Virus record (IMG/VR): IMGVR_UViG_3300023235_000008
Location: 62,001 to 126,000 of that record
DNA: 64,000 bases
Strand: one strand, 5' to 3'
Shown: piece by piece, positions 5,119-58,884 of the stretch
How the letters are laid out: the number at the start of each line of letters is the position of its first letter
Numbering within the stretch: position 1 is the first letter of the stretch
Made by a program: the position numbers and the translations under genes
Notes under the pieces: generated by a model
Seen by the model: the letters and a program-made list of their open reading frames with translations, nothing else
Databases searched by the model: none
Told to the model about the DNA's origin: nothing

Positions 5119-5473
5119 CACTATTGTACGTGGAACAATCACCCCGATTAAAAAGAATATCCTAATCTATGATATGAACTTTGGCGAACGCACTACTAAA
5201 GCTGGTCTTATTTTGATGGGCGATGATGGTAAGCAGCGTGGTATTCGTCCACGTTGGGGCAAGGTTTTAGCCGTTGGTCCAGAACAAGATTCTGTTGAGC
5301 CGGGACAATGGGTATTAGTAGCGCACGGGCGATGGTCACGTGGTATTCAGTATGAAGTTGATGGCAATATGCAAGAAGTTCGTATGGCAGACCCAGATGA
5401 TATTCTTGGTGTGCAAGACGATGTGCCCGATGATGCTTACGTTGCAAGCACCGATACGGCTACTGCGTATTAA
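5105..5473 (+). CDS. groES: GroES-like co-chaperonin
   Basis: GERTTKAGLIL mobile loop, GKVLAVGP, VEPGQWVL, DDILGV. Confidence 0.8.
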   Translation: MPVNNTIVRGTITPIKKNILIYDMNFGERTTKAGLILMGDDGKQRGIRPRWGKVLAVGPEQDSVEPGQWVLVAHGRWSRGIQYEVDGNMQEVRMADPDDILGVQDDVPDDAYVASTDTATAY

Positions 5474-17374: not shown

Positions 17375-17402
17375 AAAAGGGGGTGGACAAGCCTCCTTTT
17401 TT
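17375..17402 (+). terminator. Intrinsic terminator after the lysis cassette
   Basis: AAAAGGGGGT-loop-GCCTCCTTTT followed by a T-run. Confidence 0.65.
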
Positions 17403-17619
17403 ATTGTATAATACTCCAATGAATAAAAAGCTATTTTGGCCAGCTATGGCACGTGAAGAAACCCCCGACGATGTTAGGCGTGGGTGCATGACTTGTGTGC
17501 ATAATGCCTATTACCCAGCAGCTTGCAACCACCCAGATGTAACCCATGCGGGTATGAGTGTCTTGAGAATGATCGTATATTCTGGAAATGGCACAATGAA
17601 ACAGATGGGTAAATAGAAT

Positions 17620-18462
17620 ATGGACTATTATCAAGTTCTCGGGGTAGAAAAAAACGCTTCGGACAATACAATCAAACAAGCATACAAGACACTGGCTAAA
17701 AAGCATCATCCAGACTTGGGCGGTGATGAAAATCAGTTCAAACAAATCAGCGAAGCGTATGACACATTAAAGAACCCTGAGACACGACAGGCATATGATG
17801 CACGTTCACAGTTTGGTGGACGCCAACAAAACCGATTTGAAGAGTTCAGAAGTGGTAGAGGAATGGAAGATATTCTACGCCAAATGGAAGAACAAATGGC
17901 AGCAAGAGGCGGCGGGTTTCGTCCACGTCAAACAAAAAACCATAATCTGAACATTACACTAAATGTAACACTTGACGAACTTATAATGAATGAAACCGAT
18001 GTATCTGTTGAAAAGCATTTAAGCATCAGAATGAGTAATGGTGAACGTGAACTTGTAAAAGTCAACATTCCGCCTTATATTCAACATGGCGAAACACTTC
18101 ATATCGCTGGTCTTGGAGATAATGCCAATCCATCATTGACAAGGGGTGACTTGTATGTTACTATAATGCTTAGTCCTCATAAAACCTTTGAAAAGAAAGG
18201 GTTGGACTTGGTTTCTACTATGGTTATCGATAGTCTTGACGCCATTCTTGGGTGTGAAGAAATAATACAGACATTATCAGGAAAGAACTTGAAAGTGAAA
18301 ATCCCAGCAGGGACAGACAATGGACAAGTTCTGAATCTAAGAGATGAAGGTCTTCGTTTCCGAGAAAAGAAGGGAAGTATCTTTATCCAAGTGAGCGTTA
18401 AGACACCAAAAAATCTAACCCCTAAACAACTTGATTTTATCAAGAAAGCAAAATCGGAGTAA
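17620..18462 (+). CDS. dnaJ: DnaJ/CbpA-type co-chaperone (no Zn finger)
   Basis: DYYQVLGV, HPD motif, FKQISEAYDTL, C-terminal GDLYV and VKIPAGT. Confidence 0.92.
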   Translation: MDYYQVLGVEKNASDNTIKQAYKTLAKKHHPDLGGDENQFKQISEAYDTLKNPETRQAYDARSQFGGRQQNRFEEFRSGRGMEDILRQMEEQMAARGGGFRPRQTKNHNLNITLNVTLDELIMNETDVSVEKHLSIRMSNGERELVKVNIPPYIQHGETLHIAGLGDNANPSLTRGDLYVTIMLSPHKTFEKKGLDLVSTMVIDSLDAILGCEEIIQTLSGKNLKVKIPAGTDNGQVLNLRDEGLRFREKKGSIFIQVSVKTPKNLTPKQLDFIKKAKSE

Positions 18463-18465
18463 ACA

Positions 18466-20766
18466 ATGTTAGAAGAAAATCCAGATATCAACAAGATCAT
18501 TGATGCATCACAAGACTATGCAGCAAAACTAAAGCATCAATATGTTACACTTGAACACCTTTTGTTCGGGTTGATCAAAGACCGAGAGTTTTCAACCATT
18601 CTTGCAGAAGTCAAGGTTGACGTTGAAGGACTTCGTGATGAGTTAGTAACTTATATGCGGGATCGTCCAGAACTTATCAGTCGGCATACAGGCACACCAA
18701 AGCGAACACATGCCCTTGAGCGTGTATTTAACCGTGCCTATACACAAGTGTTGTTCAGTGGTCGAAGCCGTATGGATAGCATTGACCTATATTTGAGCAT
18801 CCTTGCCGAAACCAACTCACACGCCGCATATTATCTTCTTAAATATCTTCCTTCTAAAGACGATATCATGGAAATGTATCAGCCCAAGGACAAAAAGGGC
18901 GCAACAAATAAATCTAAAAAAATGAACGAAACCCAAGCGCAAGAGTTGCTTGAAGAATACTGTAGCAATCTTAACGAGATGGCAGATAACGGAAAGATTG
19001 ATCCCGTTATTGGACGTGATGCCGAACTTGATGATATTGCACAAGTTCTTGCAAGACGCACAAAGTCAAACGTGCTAATGGTCGGTGATCCCGGCGTTGG
19101 TAAGACTGCGATTGCAGAAGGATTGGCATTGAAAATCAACGAAGGCAAAGTGCCTGACTATCTTGTAGGATGGGCGGTGTGGAACCTTGATGTTGGGTCA
19201 TTGCTTGCAGGTTGTAAGTTCCGTGGTGAGTTTGAAGAGAAAATCAAAGAAACCATTGAAGCACTTGAAGCACGTGGCAAGTCAATCTTGTTTATCGACG
19301 AAGCGCACACGATGCGTGGTGCTGGCAATGCTGGCACTGGCGGCGGTCCAGATTTCGCCAATATGCTGAAGCCAGCACTTGGTCGTGGCGGAATCAAGGT
19401 TATTGCATCAACAACATGGGATGAATATACCACATCATTCGAAAAAGACCGTGCTATGATGCGGCGTTTCTATCGTTTGACCGTTGATGAACCAACGCCA
19501 GAAGTTGCCAAGGATATTGTTGCGGCGATTTCGGTATATATTCGTGAACATCATGGCGCAAAGGCTATCAAAAAGGATGCCATCGAAGCGGCGGTTGATT
19601 ATTCCGTTCGTTATCAAGCCGATAAGAAACTTCCCGACAAAGCGATTGATTTGATTGATGCGGCTTGTGCAAAGCAACGGTTGCTTGGTAATAAGAACTT
19701 CGTAATCAAGAAAGTTGATGTATTGACGGAGTTAGCCCGTGCAACGGGTGTTCCAATGAATACAATGGACGATAAAGAAAAGTCCGAGAACTTGCAAAAT
19801 ATTGAAATCAATATCAAAACCAATGTGTTCGGTCAAGATGATTCAGTTGATAAAGTTCTTGATAAAATCTTCGTGGCAAAGGCTGGATTGAAATCACACG
19901 ACAAGCCGATTGGTTCCTTTATGTTTATGGGTCCAACGGGTGTGGGTAAAACCGAGTTGGCGAAACAGCTGTCACGTGAACTTGCAATGAAACTGTTGCG
20001 ATATGATATGAGTGAATATCAAGAGAAACACGCCATTGCACGTTTCGTTGGTGCCCCTGCGGGTTACGTAGGTCACGACGATACACCGGGTCTTTTGATT
20101 AAAGACATCAAAGAAAATCCTAACGCTATCATTCTTTTTGACGAAGTTGAAAAGGCGCACCCTGATGTTCTAAACATCTTGTTGCAAATGATGGACGAAG
20201 GTTATGTCACCAGTGCCAAAGGTCAACGAGCAGATGCACGTAACTGTGTTATCATTTTGACATCAAACTTGGGTGCTGCGGCAAACGAGAAAAACAACAT
20301 CGGCTTCGGATTATCCGGTGCAGCGTTGCAGAAATCAGGTGAAGAAGATAAAGAGTATGAAGCATACTTTGCACCAGAATTCCGTAACCGTGTCGATGCT
20401 GTATGTAAATTCGGCAAGTTATCTAAAATGGCGATGAAAAAGATTGTCAATAAGTTCATGAATGATGTTAATGAACTTCTTAGTGAACGTGATATGAAAA
20501 TTCGTACCACGGATGAACTTGTAGAATACCTTGTAGATAGTGGCTTTGATCCAAAGACGGGTGCACGTCCATTGGCACGTATCATCGATCAAGAAATCAA
20601 AGTCCCGCTTGCCAAGAAGATGCTGTTCGAAAAACTTGACAAAGGTAGCATTATTGTGGTAAACTATAAGGATAAAGAGGTCACATTTGACTTCACAAAT
20701 CCCCTTCCAATTGAAAATTTAGAAAAAGAGGCCATTAATGACCAAGGTATTATCGAAATCGATTAA
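18466..20766 (+). CDS. clpA: ATP-dependent Clp protease ATP-binding subunit (ClpA-like)
   Basis: Clp N domain, two AAA modules (GDPGVGKT, GPTGVGKT), LPDKAIDLID, IGF-like loop (NIGFG). Confidence 0.92.
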   Translation: MLEENPDINKIIDASQDYAAKLKHQYVTLEHLLFGLIKDREFSTILAEVKVDVEGLRDELVTYMRDRPELISRHTGTPKRTHALERVFNRAYTQVLFSGRSRMDSIDLYLSILAETNSHAAYYLLKYLPSKDDIMEMYQPKDKKGATNKSKKMNETQAQELLEEYCSNLNEMADNGKIDPVIGRDAELDDIAQVLARRTKSNVLMVGDPGVGKTAIAEGLALKINEGKVPDYLVGWAVWNLDVGSLLAGCKFRGEFEEKIKETIEALEARGKSILFIDEAHTMRGAGNAGTGGGPDFANMLKPALGRGGIKVIASTTWDEYTTSFEKDRAMMRRFYRLTVDEPTPEVAKDIVAAISVYIREHHGAKAIKKDAIEAAVDYSVRYQADKKLPDKAIDLIDAACAKQRLLGNKNFVIKKVDVLTELARATGVPMNTMDDKEKSENLQNIEINIKTNVFGQDDSVDKVLDKIFVAKAGLKSHDKPIGSFMFMGPTGVGKTELAKQLSRELAMKLLRYDMSEYQEKHAIARFVGAPAGYVGHDDTPGLLIKDIKENPNAIILFDEVEKAHPDVLNILLQMMDEGYVTSAKGQRADARNCVIILTSNLGAAANEKNNIGFGLSGAALQKSGEEDKEYEAYFAPEFRNRVDAVCKFGKLSKMAMKKIVNKFMNDVNELLSERDMKIRTTDELVEYLVDSGFDPKTGARPLARIIDQEIKVPLAKKMLFEKLDKGSIIVVNYKDKEVTFDFTNPLPIENLEKEAINDQGIIEID

Positions 20767-24204: not shown

Positions 24205-24501
24205 ATGAAAATATTACCACGCTATAGAACAGATCAATGGACAAGAGGGGAAGATTTCCCCAACGAGCCGTTTGTGTTTGATGTGCGTAATTGGGACATC
24301 GCTCATACTATGTACCGAATGTTGATGACACCTAAGTTACAACAGGATCGCAATGTAGTCGCAGTATCCTTGCGTGGTATTCCAACCGCTAACGAACTTC
24401 GCTGGTGTGAAAGAGCCGCCAGAAAAGGTAACTTCAGAATAATATGGCTTAGTACAAAAATGAAAGAAACATCAGATGCAGAACTACCTAACAACACTTA
24501 A
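24205..24501 (+). CDS. Hypothetical protein, paralog of 46087..46374
   Basis: Shared [17 protein letters not shown] and [12 protein letters not shown] blocks. Confidence 0.7.
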
Positions 24502-26128
24502 ACACATCATGGACAACGGCGTAGATCGTGGCGATAGAACGGGCACAGGCACACGCTCTGTATTCGCTCACCAGATGCGATTTGATTTGTCAGAAGGCTT
24601 TCCAGCCGTTACAACCAAGAAGCTGGCGTTCAAAGCTGTAAAGAGTGAACTGCTATGGTTCCTAGAAGGGTCTGGTGATGAAAGACGATTAGCTGAAATC
24701 AATGGCACTGAACGCACAATCTGGACTGCTAACGCTGAAGCTGACTATTGGAAACCCAAAGCAAAGTTCGAAGGCGACCTCCAAAAAGTATATGGCTACC
24801 AATGGCGAAAATGGTCAAAATATGATTCTTGGCGAGATTCTGTAACTCTAATAGAACAGGGCACTAAAATTGGTGACGATCAACCATTTTCCTTGGATTT
24901 TGATTTAGAACAAGTAGATTACACAGGTGGTGATGATTTTGTAGGAAAGATTTTTGATACAAATCAATCAGGGCAAATAAAAATTCTTAAAAAACTTGAT
25001 GTGAGAAATGGCAATTCGTATTACCGAGTTCAATTTTTAGAAGGTATCAACACCATCATAGACTGCTCTCGTCCTAACATTCGTTCAAAAACTGTAAAGA
25101 ACCCATATGCCATGACTGCGGCTGAAGGTGCTGGGTGTTATGGAGTAGTCGATAAACGATCAAAATATTTAACATCAGCATATAATATGTGGCTCAATAT
25201 GATGGAGCGGTGTCATGGTGAAAATACTGAGAAGACACTATTTTATAAACAACAAGGTATTTATGTGGATTCTAAGTGGAGATGTTTTAGTAATTTTTAC
25301 AGAGATATTCATGGTTTGGTTGGATTTGACAAATGGGTTATTAACCATTCAAAATATGAATTAGATAAAGATTATTTTGGTAATAAATTTTATGGAATAG
25401 AATCAACTATATTTCTACCTATGTGGTATAATCAATATATTTTACCTAAACATAATAATGATTTGATTATTGCGACCAATAAGAAATCTAATGAAGAATT
25501 CAAATTCACAACACCATCCTTGTTCTATAAACAAAAAGATATTAAAGATACTGATATGGTAAATAGAGCATTCCGTGAACAAAACGGCAATTCTATAAAT
25601 TGGTCATTTAGCAAAAAATCACCGCCAATCGGATATAAATGGAGACAGCAATTTTTTGTAGATCAAATCGCTGATGTCATTGAAAGCATTAAGAATGACC
25701 CTGACAGCCGTAGACATATCGTTACAGCGTATAATCCGGGAGAACTTCAAGATATGGCTCTACCACCGTGTCATATGATCTTTCAATTCTATGTGGCTAA
25801 TGGCAAACTATCATGCCATATGAACCAGCGTTCTTGTGACCTTTTTTTAGGCGTTCCATTCAATATCGCCAGTTATGCTTTACTTACACATATGATTGCT
25901 CAAGTATGCGGGCTTGATGTAGGTGAACTAATCCTGACATTAGGCGATGCTCACATTTATAGCAATCACTTCGATCAAGTCAATGAACAGCTATCACGAG
26001 AACCACAGGATTTACCAACGCTATGGTTGAACCCTGATATTAAAGATATTGATAGTTTCACAATGGATGATATCAAGCTTGAGAACTACAATCCACAGGA
26101 CACTATAAAAGCAAAGATGGCAGTGTGA
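24476..26128 (+). CDS. thyA: Thymidylate synthase ThyA with an in-frame endonuclease insertion
   Basis: DRTGTGT, TTKK, ELLWFL, YGYQWR, DSRR, LPPCH, QRSCD, GDAHIY. It is 550 aa versus ~264 for an ordinary ThyA. Confidence 0.93.
24815..25657 (+). mobile_element. In-frame HNH-like homing endonuclease domain inside thyA
   Basis: W..MMERC...Y...GIYV...W..FSNF...LDKD...NK.Y...T.FLP..YN pattern; visibly AT-richer than its flanks. Confidence 0.7.
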
Positions 26129-38646: not shown

Positions 38647-40290
38647 TTGAGTTACGTTGACGCAATCTACGATAAACGAAATAACGTTGTTAAGGTAGTT
38701 GAAAGACTGAATGGTAAACGAATAGTAACCGAACATCCGTGTAAATGGACGTTTTATTATGACGATCCAGCTGGAAAGTATAATACTATTTTTCGTAATC
38801 CTGTTTCCAAATTCGAATCTGATAGTAAAAAGGAATTTCATCGTGAGTTGAAAAGTCGTAGTCAGACACGTGTATGGGAAAGTGATATAAATATTGTTAA
38901 TAAGACACTTGAACGTCACTATATTGGGCAGATGTCGCCCAAGCTAAACGTGTGCTTCTTCGATATTGAGGTTGACTTTTCGCCTACGCTTGGTTTTGCG
39001 CCACCCGATGACCCGTTCAATAAAGTAACGGCTATCTCATTATATTGTTCGTGGATGGATGAAATGGTTACGTTAGCTATTCCACCAAATACACTGACGC
39101 TTGAAGAAGCCGAGGCAATGATGGATTTCCCCAACACATACCTATTCAGTAACGAAGGGGATATGATTGAAACGTTCCTTGACTTAATCCAAGAAGCCGA
39201 TGTGCTTACGGGTTGGAACAGTGAAGGCTACGATATTCCGTATATGGTTAACCGAACGGCACGGGTTCTTAGTAAGAATGACACACGCCGTTTCTGTTTA
39301 CTTGACCAACTCCCAAAAGAACGTGAATACGAAAAATATGGCAAGATGCAAAAGACGTATGATTTACGTGGACGTATTCACTTGGATAGCCTATCATTGT
39401 ATCAGCAATATACCTATCACGAAATGCATTCGTATTCGTTGGATACCATTTCTGAATATGAACTAGGTGCCCGTAAAATCCAATACGCAGGATCGCTAGA
39501 TAAGTTATACAATGACGACTTTTATAAGTTCATTGAATACAACCGTCAGGATACTTTGCTATTAAAGCAACTTGATGATAAGCTACAGTTTATTGATCTA
39601 TGCAATGAAATCGCACACGATAATACAGTGCTTATTGCGGCAGCTATGGGTGCCGTTGGTGTTACTGACCAAGCCCTTATCAACTATGCGCATTCACTTG
39701 ATATGGTTGTGCCTAATAAGGTTCATTATGGCGACGACGAAGATCACCGTGCGGCTGGTGCTTATGTGGCGCATCCGAAGAAAGGCACACATAAATGGGT
39801 AGGTGCTATCGATATTAACTCACTATATCCATCGGCTATTCGTGCATTGAATATGAGTCCCGAGACATTTGTAGCACAGTTATTGCCTACACATACACGT
39901 CCGCTTATTGAAAAACGAATGGCTGAAGGCAAGTCGTTTGCAGGAGCATGGGAAGGGTTATTTGGTACACTTGAATATTCCTTTATGGATGATAAAGATG
40001 ATACCACACCACTCAAAGTACAATGGGCAGATGGCAAGCAAACCACACATACTGGCAAGGAAATTAACGATATTATTTTCCATGGTGGTGAAAAATGGGT
40101 AGTAAGCGGTAACGGCACAGTATTTGAGTATAATAAGCAAGGCATCATTCCCGGCATACTTGAAAAATGGTACGCAGAACGCCAAGAACTACAAGCCAAG
40201 AAGAAGGCAGCGGCGGTTATTGATGATTCTACCATAGAAGTACCTAATGATATTATGTCTAAACTTGGAAAGGATTTGATAGACGACTAA
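38647..40290 (+). CDS. Family B DNA polymerase, piece 1 (N-terminus, 3'-5' exonuclease, palm motif A, first finger helix)
   Basis: FFDIEV (ExoI), GWNSEGYDIPY (ExoII), YNRQD (ExoIII), AIDINSLYPS (motif A), GIIPGILEKWY.ER; then a stop. TTG start with AGGAG. Confidence 0.93.
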   Translation: MSYVDAIYDKRNNVVKVVERLNGKRIVTEHPCKWTFYYDDPAGKYNTIFRNPVSKFESDSKKEFHRELKSRSQTRVWESDINIVNKTLERHYIGQMSPKLNVCFFDIEVDFSPTLGFAPPDDPFNKVTAISLYCSWMDEMVTLAIPPNTLTLEEAEAMMDFPNTYLFSNEGDMIETFLDLIQEADVLTGWNSEGYDIPYMVNRTARVLSKNDTRRFCLLDQLPKEREYEKYGKMQKTYDLRGRIHLDSLSLYQQYTYHEMHSYSLDTISEYELGARKIQYAGSLDKLYNDDFYKFIEYNRQDTLLLKQLDDKLQFIDLCNEIAHDNTVLIAAAMGAVGVTDQALINYAHSLDMVVPNKVHYGDDEDHRAAGAYVAHPKKGTHKWVGAIDINSLYPSAIRALNMSPETFVAQLLPTHTRPLIEKRMAEGKSFAGAWEGLFGTLEYSFMDDKDDTTPLKVQWADGKQTTHTGKEINDIIFHGGEKWVVSGNGTVFEYNKQGIIPGILEKWYAERQELQAKKKAAAVIDDSTIEVPNDIMSKLGKDLIDD

Positions 40291-40669: not shown

Positions 40670-41582
40670 CGAAACTGAAAAGTTAGAACAAGTGATGAGA
40701 GAAAACGATTTGGTTGTAAGAAACGGCAAGATTGAAAACAAAGATAGGGGTGCAGTAGCATTCCGGGATAAGCGGCAGTTGGTCAAAAAGATCAACTTGA
40801 ATTCGTAAATATTGCGACTTTATATAGTAATATATAATGAAAAACTCCTCTAACTGCGGGGAACTCTCACCGAGACAATCCGCAGCCAAGCCCGTAAGGG
40901 AAGGTTCAACGACTATGCGAAAGCAGTAGTATCAAGTGATACGAAACGGGGAGCAACCTTCAAGGTTGGTGATATAGTCTAATCTGTATGGCGACATACA
41001 GCAGTTCATGAGAGAACGCACATAAACTAACGACTTATGTGGAATATAAATGTGTATGGTGCTGTATTGAATAAGCATTGTCGTTTCTACGTCTTTGATA
41101 TCGGACAGTCAACCACACTAACTGGTCGGTGTATTGCAAAGCATATGTCAGCATACGTGAATCAATCACTGGCGGGTGAATACGATCATACTGGAAAAAG
41201 TATTGTGTATGGCGACACAGACTCAGAATTTGCCGAAACCATACACAAGACCAATTGGGGTGAGCTTACCGTAGAAGAATTGTTCAACCGAGGGCAGCGT
41301 TATTGGAATGATGCCAAGGATGATACAAAGGAATATAGTGCTAACGATGATTTGAAGGTTCTTTCGTATAACCCGGAAGAAGGCAAAGCGTATTACGGGC
41401 ACATCAATTATATCTACAGGCATAAGGTATCTAAAGAACAATGGGAAATTGAGGATCAATATGGTAATACCATTCGTGTAACTGGCGATCACTCAGTTAT
41501 GGTTGAGAGAGATGGCGTATTGATGGAAATAAAACCACGAGATATATTGAAGGATGATTTACTTATTACTACTACTGAATAA
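40629..41582 (+). CDS. Family B DNA polymerase, piece 2 (spliced 40629-40806 + 41053-41582): second finger helix, motif B, YGDTD, IntN
   Basis: ATG at 40629 after AGGAG. Splicing restores DKRQLVKKINLNSLYGAVLN. The spliced length is 708 nt, giving 235 aa. Confidence 0.85.
40807..41052 (+). mobile_element. ORF-less group I intron (246 nt) in PolB motif B
   Basis: P AACTGCGGGGAA, Q AATCCGCAGC, R GTTCAACGACTA, S GATATAGTCT. The exon ends in U pairing U.G with IGS GCGACTT, and the intron ends in G. Confidence 0.9.
41223..41579 (+). mobile_element. Split intein N-fragment (119 aa, Ser1, no Cys)
   Basis: Follows YGDTD; block B TGDHSVMV; stops at 41580-41582. Confidence 0.88.
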
Positions 41583-58124: not shown

Positions 58125-58185
58125 TATTGCAATTGTCGATAAATAGGTATATAATGTGTATTAATATTAACAGGGGAGAAAAGTA

Positions 58186-58884
58186 ATGAAGAAAATTATA
58201 GAAATACGCTCCGCAGAAGGTGGGGCAGATAGCCAAATGTTTGTTGGCGATTTAGCCAACGCATACCAGAAATATTTCAATCGTGTAGGTTGAAGTAATC
58301 GCATCGTTCGGGAAAGACCCAGTGATGCGGGGTACTACGAAATTGCCATTGAAGTTGAAGGCAAAAATCTCCAAAAATTAGAAAATGAAACAGGTGGACA
58401 TCGTATTCAACGAGTTCCACCAACGGAAAAGCGTGGGCGGGTTCATACCTCTACGGTAACTGTTGCTGTTCTTGATACTAATGTTAAAACTGATTCGAAG
58501 TATGATTTACTTGACGAACAACATTTCTACGTTGAGTGGTTTAGTGGAACTGGGGCTGGTGGTCAACATAGAAATAAAACTCAAAATAGTTGCAGACTAT
58601 ATCATTTGCCTACAGGATTGGTTGAAAGCCGACAAGGTAGGAAGCGTGATAATAACTTAAAGGATGCCAAGTCAGCATTACTCGAAATATTAAAGAATGC
58701 GAAAAATGGACAAATACAATCCACCAATTCATCTATTAGAAAATCGCAGTTAGGTGCTGGGTGTAGGGGGGATAAAACATTTACTATTAGATTTCAAGAT
58801 GATCAAGCCATTTGTCATGCCAATGGAAAAACAACTACATCCAAAAAGTATATGAAAGGGTTTATGGATGAGTTGTGGTCATAA
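58186..58884 (+). CDS. RF1-type peptide chain release factor homolog with an in-frame UGA at codon 36
   Basis: EIRSAEGG, GGHRIQRVPPTEKRGRVHTSTVTVAVL (PxT), GAGGQH (GGQ). TGA at 58291-58293 with the same frame continuing; GGGGAG RBS. Confidence 0.88.

What the first reader, a model, noticed from the sequence alone, without database searches (positions are those of the whole stretch)
58186..58884. Phage RF1-type release factor gated by a single in-frame UGA plus a 3' stem-loop
Seen: one frame encodes EIRSAEGG...VG-UGA-SNR...GGHRIQRVPPTEKRGRVHTST...GAGGQH. The UGA (58291-58293) is followed at once by a hairpin at 58294-58336 (AGUA/UACU, CGCAUC/GAUGCG, GGG/CCC, AAAGA loop). Known: this position corresponds to the G-W of bacterial RF1 (..GWK..); PxT marks RF1, which reads UAA/UAG; UGA is read only by RF2; UGA-A is a leaky context. 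The rest of the window uses TGA as a genuine stop (many ATGA overlaps) and TGG for Trp. Inference: full-length RF is made only when UGA is read through as Trp, so the gene may sense host RF2 activity or a suppressor tRNA. This is cross-factor sensing rather than the self-feedback of the prfB +1 frameshift, and might be an early step towards UGA reassignment. The protein also lacks RF domain 1.
Basis: partly seen in the sequence, partly recalled or inferred. Interest (0 to 1): 0.87.

Follow-up and report, generated by a model that had tools for sequence, protein, structure and literature searches.

The report
Stop-codon-gated phage release factor gene
A jumbo phage carries a shortened copy of bacterial release factor 1 that can be made only if the ribosome reads through a conserved in-frame UGA, and hundreds of relatives keep a stop-codon gate at that same spot, so this looks like an undescribed switch that senses how well the cell terminates translation.

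Summary
Window 58186-58884 (+) encodes a 232-codon RF1-type release factor. It has the PxT and GGQ motifs, lacks domain 1, and is interrupted once by TGA at 58291-58293, followed by a hairpin.

The TGA is not an error or a pseudogene lesion. Among 234 distinct relatives from viral, metagenomic and bacterial contigs:
- 148 have an in-frame TGA at this site, which is the conserved Trp of RF1.
- 78 have, at the same site, the prfB-type +1 frameshift cassette (GGAGG, 3 nt, CTT-stop-C).
- Only 7 are uninterrupted, and two of those read TGG.

Both halves are under purifying selection. The base after the TGA is never T. Flanking genes use TGA as a stop, and suppressor tRNAs are essentially absent from the flanks.

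The hairpin is conserved with compensatory changes only in the window's subclade. The largest subgroup shows no conserved structure.

The best reading is programmed UGA readthrough, probably inserting Trp. It makes synthesis of a compact RF1-like factor depend on inefficient termination. This mode appears to derive from a frameshift-gated ancestor.

I found no description of this in the literature, and a 2016 recoding review calls such a case unknown. The physiological role is inferred, not shown. The "step towards reassignment" idea is not supported.

The parts
58127..58155 (+). sigma-70-like promoter candidate (TTGCAA, 17 nt, TATAAT) just upstream of the gene
   Evidence: Consensus scan, 10 of 12 matches. 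This is a consensus match only and the count in the region is not above chance.
58173..58178 (+). Shine-Dalgarno-like GGGGAG, 7 nt before the ATG
   Evidence: Read directly from the sequence.
58186..58290 (+). ORF piece 1: 35 codons, the start of RF domain 2 (the AEGG...DL..AY helix)
   Evidence: Pfam PCRF E = 7e-7 at profile positions 103-132, and NCBIfam prfA positions 107-136. Across 105 distinct homologues this piece evolves as coding sequence: differences per codon position are 0.37, 0.28 and 0.64.
58291..58293 (+). In-frame UGA gate codon (context GGT-TGA-A), at the conserved RF1 Trp position
   Evidence: TGA is found in 106 of 106 distinct readthrough-type contexts. The next base is A in 81, C in 18, G in 7 and T in 0, against 11 T among the window's 31 genuine TGA stops (p = 1.6e-8). 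The preceding codon is Gly in 93 of 106. Uninterrupted relatives have TGG.
58294..58336 (+). RNA hairpin directly 3' of the UGA. Conserved core stem 58299-58306 with 58323-58330; inner stem 58310-58312 with 58318-58320; loop AAAGA; the outer AGUA/UACU pairs are specific to this window
   Evidence: MFE -18.7 kcal/mol, z = -3.0. In 18 subclade sequences the 8-bp core is paired in 91.7% of cells, against 30-45% for slid controls. Four pairs change on both sides. Covariation score is 0.433 against 0.234 for shuffles (0 of 500 reach it). It is only modestly more stable than synonymous recodings, z about -1.5 to -2.5 in 7 of 11 sequences.
58294..58884 (+). ORF piece 2: 196 codons plus TAA; the rest of domain 2, then domain 3 (GGQ) and domain 4
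   Evidence: Pfam PCRF and RF-1. NCBIfam prfA scores 127.8 bits, against prfB 67.9 and prfH 35.2. A homologue models at pLDDT 86.6 and superposes on ribosome-bound RF1 at TM 0.84-0.88.
58417..58425 (+). PPT tripeptide (the PxT stop-codon recognition motif of RF1) within RIQRVPPTEKRGRVHTS
   Evidence: P, T, E, G, R, V, H, T and S are invariant in the family alignment.
58558..58566 (+). GGQ peptidyl-tRNA hydrolysis motif
   Evidence: invariant G89, G90, Q91 of the C piece.

Best explanation
The gene encodes a compact RF1-type class-I release factor (domains 2-4 only). Its synthesis is gated by programmed readthrough of a conserved in-frame UGA.

Proposed mechanism:
- Ribosomes translate 35 codons and meet GGU-UGA-A.
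- If host RF2 acts, a useless 35-residue peptide is released.
- If a near-cognate tRNA (most probably tRNA-Trp) decodes UGA, the conserved Trp is inserted and the full 232-residue factor is made.
- Output should therefore rise when UGA termination is inefficient. This is the same logic as the prfB +1 frameshift, but the gate stop is UGA while the product has RF1-type recognition motifs.
- In the window's subclade, a hairpin starting about 5 nt after the UGA probably raises readthrough.

Evolution: the readthrough gate appears to derive from a prfB-like CTT-stop-C +1 frameshift gate that relatives in bacteria and other phages carry at the same codon.

What is shown:
- conservation of the gate;
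- selection on both pieces;
- a leaky sequence context;
- TGG in the rare ungated relatives;
- the RF1 fold and motifs;
- hairpin covariation within the subclade.

What is inferred:
- that readthrough actually occurs;
- that Trp is the residue inserted;
- that readthrough responds to RF2;
- that the product supplements termination or ribosome rescue within phage translation-maintenance modules (tRNA islands, tmRNA, RNA-repair phosphatases).
For: 1. Gate conservation. Of 234 distinct family genes, 148 have an in-frame TGA at the same site. Another 78 have a +1 shift at CTT-TGA (51), CTT-TAG (24) or CTT-TAA (3). Only 7 are uninterrupted (details).
2. Frameshift clade. CTT is the codon before the stop in 62 of 62 distinct contexts. 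The base after the stop is C in 56. GGAGG or GGGGG lies exactly 3 nt upstream in 29. This is the prfB cassette.
3. Selection. The N piece shows a coding-type substitution pattern. The gene has its own SD and a promoter-like site.
4. Leaky context. The base after the UGA is never U in 106 contexts, p = 1.6e-8 against real stops.
5. Residue identity. The codon aligns with the RF1 Trp. Ungated relatives L246/L247 and L248 have TGG.
6. Genetic code. TGA is a normal stop in the window and in relatives' flanks.
7. No regular suppressor. Of 330 flanking tRNA genes, 1 has a UCA anticodon.
8. No in-frame start codon lies between the UGA and the PxT and GGQ motifs.
9. Phylogeny. The readthrough label needs only 3 changes on the tree. 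E. coli RF1 and RF2 outgroups attach on the frameshift side, across a branch with 99% support.
10. Hairpin covariation in the subclade.
11. Fold. The model superposes on ribosome-bound RF1 at TM 0.84-0.88.
12. Literature. [quoted passage not shown] A 2025 survey found no programmed frameshift in bacterial prfA (PMC12421855).
Against: - There is no expression, proteomic or reporter evidence. Readthrough, its efficiency and the inserted residue are all inferred.
- The main 43-codon subgroup has no conserved 3' structure, so the hairpin cannot be the general mechanism.
- In the frameshift clade the stop is TGA, TAG or TAA and switches often on the tree. This fits 'any slow stop codon' or plain attenuation as well as specific RF2 sensing.
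- A product with RF1 specificity cannot relieve a UGA termination deficit, so the adaptive logic of cross-sensing is unclear.
- A few lineages have lost the gate (TGG, Tyr or Leu at the site), so it is dispensable in some settings.
- Only 64 kb of the 230 kb phage genome was visible, so a suppressor tRNA elsewhere in the genome is not excluded.
Confidence: 0.62

Rival explanations
1. Constitutive attenuator. The UGA (or the frameshift site in relatives) holds synthesis of a potentially toxic, RF3-independent release factor at a few percent of the transcript's translation. It has no physiologically meaningful response to RF2 or RF1 levels.
For: Stop identity is interchangeable in the frameshift clade: 51 TGA, 24 TAG and 3 TAA, with many switches on the tree. 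RF overproduction is reported to be toxic (PMC12421855). A few lineages lost the gate without losing the gene.
Against: A weak SD or promoter would give low expression more cheaply. Instead, two different stop-dependent recoding devices are kept at the same codon across deep divergence. The frameshift version reproduces the complete prfB sensor cassette, including the stimulatory SD at 3-nt spacing. Any stop-dependent recoding event competes kinetically with release factors, so some sensing is hard to avoid.
Confidence: 0.2
2. Suppressor-tRNA or code-switch timer. A phage-encoded opal suppressor tRNA (anticodon UCA), or a late switch to TGA = Trp decoding, licenses the gene at a set time in infection.
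For: One relative (L017) has a tRNA with a UCA anticodon 1.6 kb from the gene. TGA-recoded phages with RF1 genes are known (Borges et al. preprint). Only 64 kb of the 230 kb genome was inspected.
Against: Only 1 of 330 tRNA genes flanking 238 loci has a UCA anticodon, although the gene usually sits inside tRNA islands. The window and relatives' flanks use TGA as a stop, with no gain in coding coverage when TGA is treated as sense. The gate also occurs in standard-code bacterial isolates and plasmids. A suppressor would not serve the sister clade's +1 frameshift gate.
Confidence: 0.08
3. Selenocysteine insertion. The UGA plus the immediately following hairpin acts as a bacterial SECIS element.
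For: A UGA followed directly by a conserved stem-loop is the bacterial SECIS layout.
Against: The main subgroup of the family has the UGA but no conserved hairpin. The site is a conserved Trp in RF1, and ungated relatives have TGG, Tyr or Leu, never Cys. A sister clade uses a frameshift at the same site instead.
Confidence: 0.03
4. Inactivated gene (nonsense mutation or sequencing error), or two separately translated fragments.
For: Gene callers split the gene into a 35-residue piece and a piece of roughly 155-190 residues. PGAP leaves it unannotated on the Bosea plasmid.
Against: The same TGA is present in 148 distinct sequences that are only 50-65% identical at protein level. Both pieces show a coding-type substitution pattern. 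An identical sequence occurs in two separately numbered viral-contig records (L001, L002). The first in-frame start after the UGA (58606) lies beyond both catalytic motifs.
Confidence: 0.03

Closest known systems
prfB (RF2) autoregulatory +1 programmed frameshift (SD-like element, 3 nt, CUU UGA C)
   Same: A release-factor gene whose full-length product is made only when an early in-frame stop codon is not recognised. The sister clade of this family carries the same cassette: CTT in 62 of 62 contexts, C after the stop in 56, and GGAGG or GGGGG at 3-nt spacing in 29.
   Different: - The window's gene stays in frame, so it needs readthrough, not a shift.
- The site lies in domain 2 at the RF1 Trp codon, not at codon ~26 of domain 1.
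- The product has RF1-type motifs while the gate stop is UGA, so this is not simple self-feedback.
- In the frameshift clade TAG is common. TAG is reported never to occur in prfB (PMC12421855).
Release-factor gene of a giant amoeba virus, expressed by stop-codon readthrough plus a separate frameshift (cited in PMC5009743)
   Same: A virus-encoded release-factor gene that needs recoding at stop codons.
   Different: - The giant-virus gene comes from a virus of a eukaryote. That its factor is eRF1-type and unrelated in fold is my recollection, not a tool result.
- The present family is bacterial RF1-type, lacks domain 1, and occurs in phages, plasmids and bacterial chromosomes.
- Here each gene uses one mode or the other, at a single conserved site.
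Canonical bacterial RF1 (prfA)
   Same: Best sequence and structure match: 120-136 bits to solved RF1 chains and TM 0.84-0.88 to ribosome-bound RF1. PxT, GGQ and the RxQRVP...GRxHTS recognition segment are kept.
   Different: It lacks domain 1, which in my recollection provides the RF3 and L11-stalk contacts. It scores far below the equivalog cut-off (128 against 400 bits). It has an obligatory recoding site, which surveys report is not found in prfA.
PrfH (RFH), the domain-1-less release-factor homologue paired with RtcB
   Same: A class-I RF paralogue without domain 1, sporadically distributed, with links to RNA-repair and conflict contexts (PMC6514570).
   Different: The TIGR03072 score is only 35 against a cut-off of 167. 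The family keeps the canonical PxT decoding motif. No RtcB partner was seen among recurrent neighbours. No recoding came up for PrfH in the RFH paper and RF-evolution review passages I checked.
Natural UGA readthrough by tRNA-Trp in bacteria and RNA phage Q-beta (A1 protein)
   Same: This is the proposed decoding event: near-cognate tRNA-Trp reading UGA, favoured by a 3' A. This rests on my own knowledge, not on a tool result.
   Different: In Q-beta, readthrough extends a complete protein to give a minor variant. Here the pre-stop product is only a 35-residue fragment, the stop replaces an internal conserved Trp, and one subclade adds a 3' hairpin.

Membership tests
Bacterial class-I release factor, RF1 type | PCRF (domains 2/4) and RF-1 (GGQ domain) with an RF1 fold | tested here: met
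   Pfam PCRF and RF-1 on the pieces. A homologue model at pLDDT 86.6 superposes on ribosome-bound RF1 at TM 0.84-0.88.
Bacterial class-I release factor, RF1 type | PxT recognition tripeptide and GGQ catalytic motif | tested here: met
   PPT at 58417-58425 and GGQ at 58558-58566. Both are invariant in the alignment of close relatives. Some distant relatives vary: PAN on the Bosea plasmid, and GGM in L106, L111, L112 and L128.
Bacterial class-I release factor, RF1 type | N-terminal domain 1 | tested here: not met
   The protein starts at the equivalent of E. coli RF1 residue ~112. The upstream sequence is the promoter and SD region.
Bacterial class-I release factor, RF1 type | Equivalog score (NCBIfam prfA cut-off 400-423 bits) | tested here: not met
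   127.8 and 126.3 bits for the C piece, and 28.8 bits for the N piece.
Bacterial class-I release factor, RF1 type | UAA/UAG-specific peptide release activity | not testable with these tools
   Needs an in vitro release assay.
PrfH (RFH) | TIGR03072 equivalog score and an RtcB partner gene | tested here: not met
   35.2 bits against a cut-off of 166.65. No RtcB among the recurrent neighbour clusters or in the window's neighbourhood.
Programmed stop-codon readthrough | The stop codon is conserved at the same codon in diverged homologues, with coding selection on both sides | tested here: met
   148 distinct genes have TGA at the site. The substitution pattern is coding-type on both sides of it.
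Programmed stop-codon readthrough | Leaky stop context | tested here: met
   The base after the stop is A in 81, C in 18, G in 7 and U in 0. That A and C are leaky contexts for UGA is taken from my own knowledge of the E. coli literature.
Programmed stop-codon readthrough | Stimulatory 3' RNA structure | tested here: inconclusive
   A covarying 8-bp stem in 18 subclade sequences, but no conserved structure in the 64-sequence main subgroup.
Programmed stop-codon readthrough | A readthrough product is detected | not testable with these tools
   Needs a reporter, western blot or mass spectrometry.
prfB-type +1 programmed frameshift | CUU-stop-C shift site with an SD-like element 3 nt upstream and the downstream ORF in the +1 frame | tested here: not met
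   The window's gene is in frame with GGT-TGA-A. The feature is met in 78 distinct relatives.
Bacterial selenoprotein (UGA plus SECIS) | The SECIS hairpin is conserved wherever the UGA is, and Cys or Sec occupies the site in homologues | tested here: not met
   The hairpin is absent from the main subgroup. Homologues have Trp, Tyr or Leu at the site.
Alternative genetic code (TGA = Trp, code 4) | TGA is used as sense throughout the genes, with low coding density under code 11 | tested here: not met
   31 of 100 window ORFs end in TGA. Coverage is 0.877 under code 11 and 0.883 with TGA as sense. Flanks of 55 relatives give 0.81 against 0.84, similar to the TAG-sense control at 0.83.

The most novel reading that the evidence does not exclude
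Mobile elements (jumbo phages, tRNA-array islands, megaplasmids) carry an ancient family of domain-1-less RF1 paralogues that act as on-demand spare parts. Their synthesis is licensed by failure of stop-codon recognition, through either of two interchangeable recoding devices at one codon: a prfB-like +1 frameshift or UGA-to-Trp readthrough, the latter boosted by a 3' hairpin in one clade. A fall in host termination capacity during infection, ribotoxin attack or host defence would then switch on a replacement release or rescue factor, alongside phage tRNAs, tmRNA and RNA-repair enzymes. This would be the first readthrough-gated release-factor gene of the bacterial type, the first recoding-regulated RF1-type gene, and a case of structure-stimulated UGA readthrough in a bacterial system.
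Probability: 0.4. Interest if true: 0.92.

Novelty: new variant of a known kind. Interest (0 to 1): 0.86.

Why it matters
**Recoding biology.** Autoregulation of RF2 by a +1 frameshift is the textbook example of recoding used as a sensor. The simpler design, an in-frame stop read through when the factor is scarce, was proposed decades ago. A 2016 recoding review (PMC5009743) reports it as unknown for RF2 genes, and its counterpart with UAG as unknown for RF1 genes. A 2025 survey (PMC12421855) found no programmed frameshift in bacterial prfA.

**What this family adds.**
- It shows the in-frame design in nature, on an RF1-type gene, next to a sister clade that independently carries the prfB cassette at the same codon.
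- That gives a natural experiment on how frameshift and readthrough gates convert into one another.
- It allows a direct test of whether RF-gene gates sense a specific factor.
- It offers a candidate bacterial readthrough-stimulating hairpin.

**Phage biology.** The family points to a phage or mobile-element module for maintaining translation termination. That bears on phage takeover of translation and on counter-defence.

**Annotation.** Gene callers split or miss this gene, or silently translate it with code 4, so it is systematically mis-annotated.

Tried and rejected
- **Close DNA relatives among deposited phage genomes:** none. A protein-level search of phage records found only matches below 40% identity, which are Lak-type or contaminating RF genes.
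- **Sequencing error or pseudogene:** rejected by conservation and selection.
- **'Full-length' database proteins with Trp at the site:** P0041 and P0001 turned out to be code-4 translations of TGA on short contigs. P0025 and P0082 are genuine TGG.
- **Family-wide hairpin:** rejected. RNAalifold finds nothing in 64 sequences of the 43-codon subgroup, mean z = -1.1.
- **SECIS/Sec, code 4 and suppressor tRNA:** see the rival explanations.
- **Re-initiation or a split protein:** there is no in-frame start between the UGA and the motifs.
- **Translational bypassing of the T4 gene 60 kind** (Gly take-off codon, stop, hairpin): rejected. The 'gap' is conserved as protein and aligns with RF1. The only downstream GGT, at 58331-58333, is out of frame.
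- **Hirsh-type features in phage tRNA-Trp genes:** looked at by eye in the alignment and not pursued.
- **Neighbour annotation in Thalassospira (L161):** uninformative.
- **ORF listing of Archangium (L209):** too noisy at high GC to use.
- **A shared promoter motif in the window:** not found.
- **Structure prediction:** It was rerun later on a database homologue, because no read-through protein may be submitted.
- **Names in public protein clusters:** only 'release factor A' on a 35-residue fragment.
Full report
**1. What is in the window**

- Positions 58186-58884 (+) form one reading frame of 232 codons, broken once by TGA at 58291-58293 and ended by TAA.
- The gene has its own GGGGAG Shine-Dalgarno sequence 7 nt before the ATG, and a TTGCAA-17-TATAAT promoter-like site at 58127-58155.
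- The 35-codon first piece and the 196-codon second piece both match the Pfam PCRF domain in continuous register (profile positions 103-132, then 139-194). The second piece also carries the RF-1/GGQ domain.
- NCBIfam ranks RF1 first at 128 bits, ahead of RF2 (68), PrfH (35) and ArfB (14). All are far below the curated cut-offs.
- A full-length database homologue that is 67% identical aligns end to end with solved RF1 structures (T. maritima residues 87-316, E. coli 112-340; 120-136 bits, against 55-84 bits for RF2). It places a Trp at the interrupted codon, opposite the RF1 Trp. In E. coli this is W144.
- The protein is therefore RF1 domains 2-4 with PPT (PxT) and GGQ, and without domain 1.
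- An AlphaFold model of that homologue (pLDDT 86.6) superposes on ribosome-bound RF1 at TM 0.84-0.88.
- The surrounding window is a densely coded, standard-code phage region holding dCMP deaminase, a 5'-3' exonuclease, a MoxR-type ATPase, a Lon-like protease and thymidylate synthase.
- Among about 100 ORFs, 31 end in TGA. There are 303 TGG codons and no tRNA gene.
- The window comes from a 230,059-bp viral contig.

**2. The stop is a family trait**

- A protein search with the second piece found 5,433 relatives in two length classes. About 155-190 residues marks calls truncated after the stop, and about 232 residues marks full-length calls.
- I fetched DNA for relatives from viral contigs, metagenome contigs and bacterial genomes, and classified each gene.
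- Of 234 distinct genes:
  - 148 have both pieces in one frame, separated by a single TGA, nearly always at the same codon.
  - 78 have the second piece in the +1 frame.
  - 7 are uninterrupted.
- Two 'full-length' database proteins are code-4 translations of TGA on short contigs.
- Two others are genuine TGG, in L246/L247 and L248. This confirms that Trp is the residue at this site.
- Other ungated genes have Tyr or Leu there.
- A few genes keep TGG and carry the TGA 2-4 codons downstream (L075, L092, L094). The stop itself is retained, not just a mutated Trp codon.
- The first piece evolves as coding sequence, with differences per codon position of 0.37, 0.28 and 0.64 across 105 sequences.

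**3. The sister clade uses the prfB device**

- In all 62 distinct +1 contexts the zero-frame ends in CTT followed by a stop: 42 TGA, 16 TAG and 4 TAA.
- The next base is C in 56 of them. GGAGG or GGGGG lies exactly 3 nt upstream in 29.
- This is the RF2 frameshift cassette, but it sits in domain 2 of an RF1-type gene, 28 codons after the EGG motif. That is within a codon of where the readthrough clade has its TGA (27 codons after the motif).
- The frameshift type occurs in many Myxococcota, including the complete genomes of Archangium gephyra and Minicystis rosea. It also occurs in Thiobacillus denitrificans and Achromobacter anxifer and in large viral contigs.
- On a tree of the post-gate parts (170 distinct sequences), the readthrough label needs 3 changes, whereas TGA and TAG swap often within the frameshift clade.
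- With E. coli RF1 and RF2 added, they attach on the frameshift side. A branch with 99% support separates them from 104 readthrough genes.
- The readthrough gate therefore looks derived from a frameshift gate. What has been preserved is the dependence on a stop codon, not one mechanism.

**4. How the UGA is probably decoded**

- The context is GGY-UGA-A. Gly precedes the stop in 93 of 106 distinct contexts. The following base is A in 81, C in 18, G in 7 and never U, although 11 of the window's 31 real TGA stops are followed by T (p = 1.6e-8).
- Flanks of relatives show no sign of TGA recoding.
- The gene usually lies in tRNA islands: 45 of 77 viral loci have a tRNA within 3 kb. Yet of 330 flanking tRNA genes only one has a UCA anticodon, and 8 are ordinary tRNA-Trp (CCA).
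- The gate also exists in standard-code isolates and plasmids: Thalassospira, Jiella, Pararhizobium, Gemmobacter and Bosea pBSY19_1.
- Near-cognate decoding by ordinary tRNA-Trp, in competition with RF2, is the simplest reading. It explains why this clade uses only TGA.

**5. The hairpin**

- In the window it folds at -18.7 kcal/mol, z = -3.0.
- In 18 sequences of the window's subclade (about 48 codons between the gate and GRVHTS, including Thalassospira, Kiloniella and Bosea), an 8-bp core starts 5 nt after the UGA.
  - It is paired in 91.7% of cells, against 30-45% for slid controls.
  - Four pairs change on both sides.
  - The covariation score is 0.433 against 0.234 for shuffles, reached by 0 of 500.
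  - One member, L141, keeps the stem with a different peptide.
- Against synonymous recodings the stability excess is modest.
- The 64-sequence 43-codon subgroup has no consensus structure.
- The hairpin is therefore a real, clade-specific accessory, plausibly a readthrough enhancer. It is not the core of the gate and not a SECIS.

**6. Context and likely role**

- Recurrent neighbours in viral loci, besides tRNAs:
  - permuted tmRNA genes, in 10 loci and often directly downstream;
  - a DSP-PTPase of the RNA-repair 'Swiss Army Knife' type, in 29 loci;
  - a calcineurin-like phosphoesterase, in 14 loci.
- PTH2, Thg1 and Macro genes lie next to the TGG-type members.
- A 2018 survey noted in passing that RF-1, Pth and tmRNA genes occur in mycobacterial tRNA arrays (PMC5966550).
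- This places the factor in translation-maintenance or rescue modules of mobile elements. That it acts as a back-up terminator when host termination capacity falls is inference.

**7. Literature**

- A 2016 recoding review (PMC5009743) says a readthrough gate was once imagined for RF2 but is found in no RF2 gene. [quoted passage not shown]
- A 2025 survey of 12,753 genomes (PMC12421855) found no programmed frameshift in prfA.
- The other papers I checked describe no recoding-gated phage RF gene. These are the studies of recoded phages and huge phages, the RFH/PrfH paper and the RF-evolution review, and a jumbo-phage comparative overview.
- My searches cover open-access text only.

**8. Verdict**

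- The reassignment idea, the suppressor-tRNA idea and a universal role for the hairpin are not supported.
- Expression, the inserted residue, responsiveness to RF2 and the biochemical activity all remain to be shown.

Noticed in passing
window 40789-41001 (+): Group I catalytic intron (Rfam RF00028, 105.8 bits, E = 2e-26). It lies in the gap between ORFs 38647-40290 and 41037-41582.
   Followed up: no
window 24476-26128 (+): A 550-residue ORF combines an HNH endonuclease region (residues ~157-382) with the C-terminal part of thymidylate synthase (residues 373-550). This suggests a homing-endonuclease, intron or intein insertion in thyA.
   Followed up: no
L008, L014, L020, L023, L025, L032, L035, L039, L042, L055 (for example L023 3549-4062, L035 3549-4012): Phage-encoded permuted (two-piece) tmRNA genes lie within about 1 kb of the RF1-like gene and often start right at its end. 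As far as I recall, two-piece tmRNAs are typical of Alphaproteobacteria, which hints at the host range.
   Followed up: partly
L017 4900-5297 (-), with a tRNA at 5163-5234 (-): A GOLLD RNA (147 bits, cut off by the stretch searched) contains an embedded 72-nt tRNA with a UCA anticodon. This is the only opal-suppressor-like tRNA among 330 flanking tRNA genes.
   Followed up: partly
L106, L111, L112, L128: A small subclade has GGM in place of the catalytic GGQ but keeps the in-frame TGA gate. These may be release-inactive variants.
   Followed up: no
L342 and L343 (viral contigs), L146: Apparent intermediates sit among relatives of the frameshift type: in-frame TAT-TAG-ATG (L342), in-frame CTA-TGA-C (L343), and an in-frame stop after Tyr (L146).
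   Followed up: no
L207 (Thiobacillus denitrificans DSM 12475 scaffold), L177, L037: Very dense tRNA arrays surround the gene: 30 tRNA genes in 8.6 kb, 15 in 8.5 kb, and 18 in 6.5 kb.
   Followed up: no
L242 9001-9552 (Bosea sp. RAC05 plasmid pBSY19_1, NZ_CP016463.1): The readthrough-type gene (GCT-TGA-A, with PAN in place of PPT) is not among the features listed for this RefSeq record, and an antisense 'hypothetical protein' is called over it. The plasmid table omits pseudogenes. The gene lies beside HipA toxin-antitoxin and CRISPR-associated genes.
   Followed up: partly
window 17383-20766 (+): Three consecutive ORFs share one frame and are separated by single stops: 17383-17616, TAG, 17620-18462, TAA, 18466-20766. 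The last is a Lon-like ATP-dependent protease. Each has its own ATG, so they are probably just adjacent genes.
   Followed up: no
L241 (1.14-Mb contig JBINOA010003469.1): A family member sits on a 1.1-Mb contig among mostly unannotated genes, with ART-PolyVal, NUDIX and 2OG-Fe(II) oxygenase domains. This may be a very large mobile element or phage.
   Followed up: no
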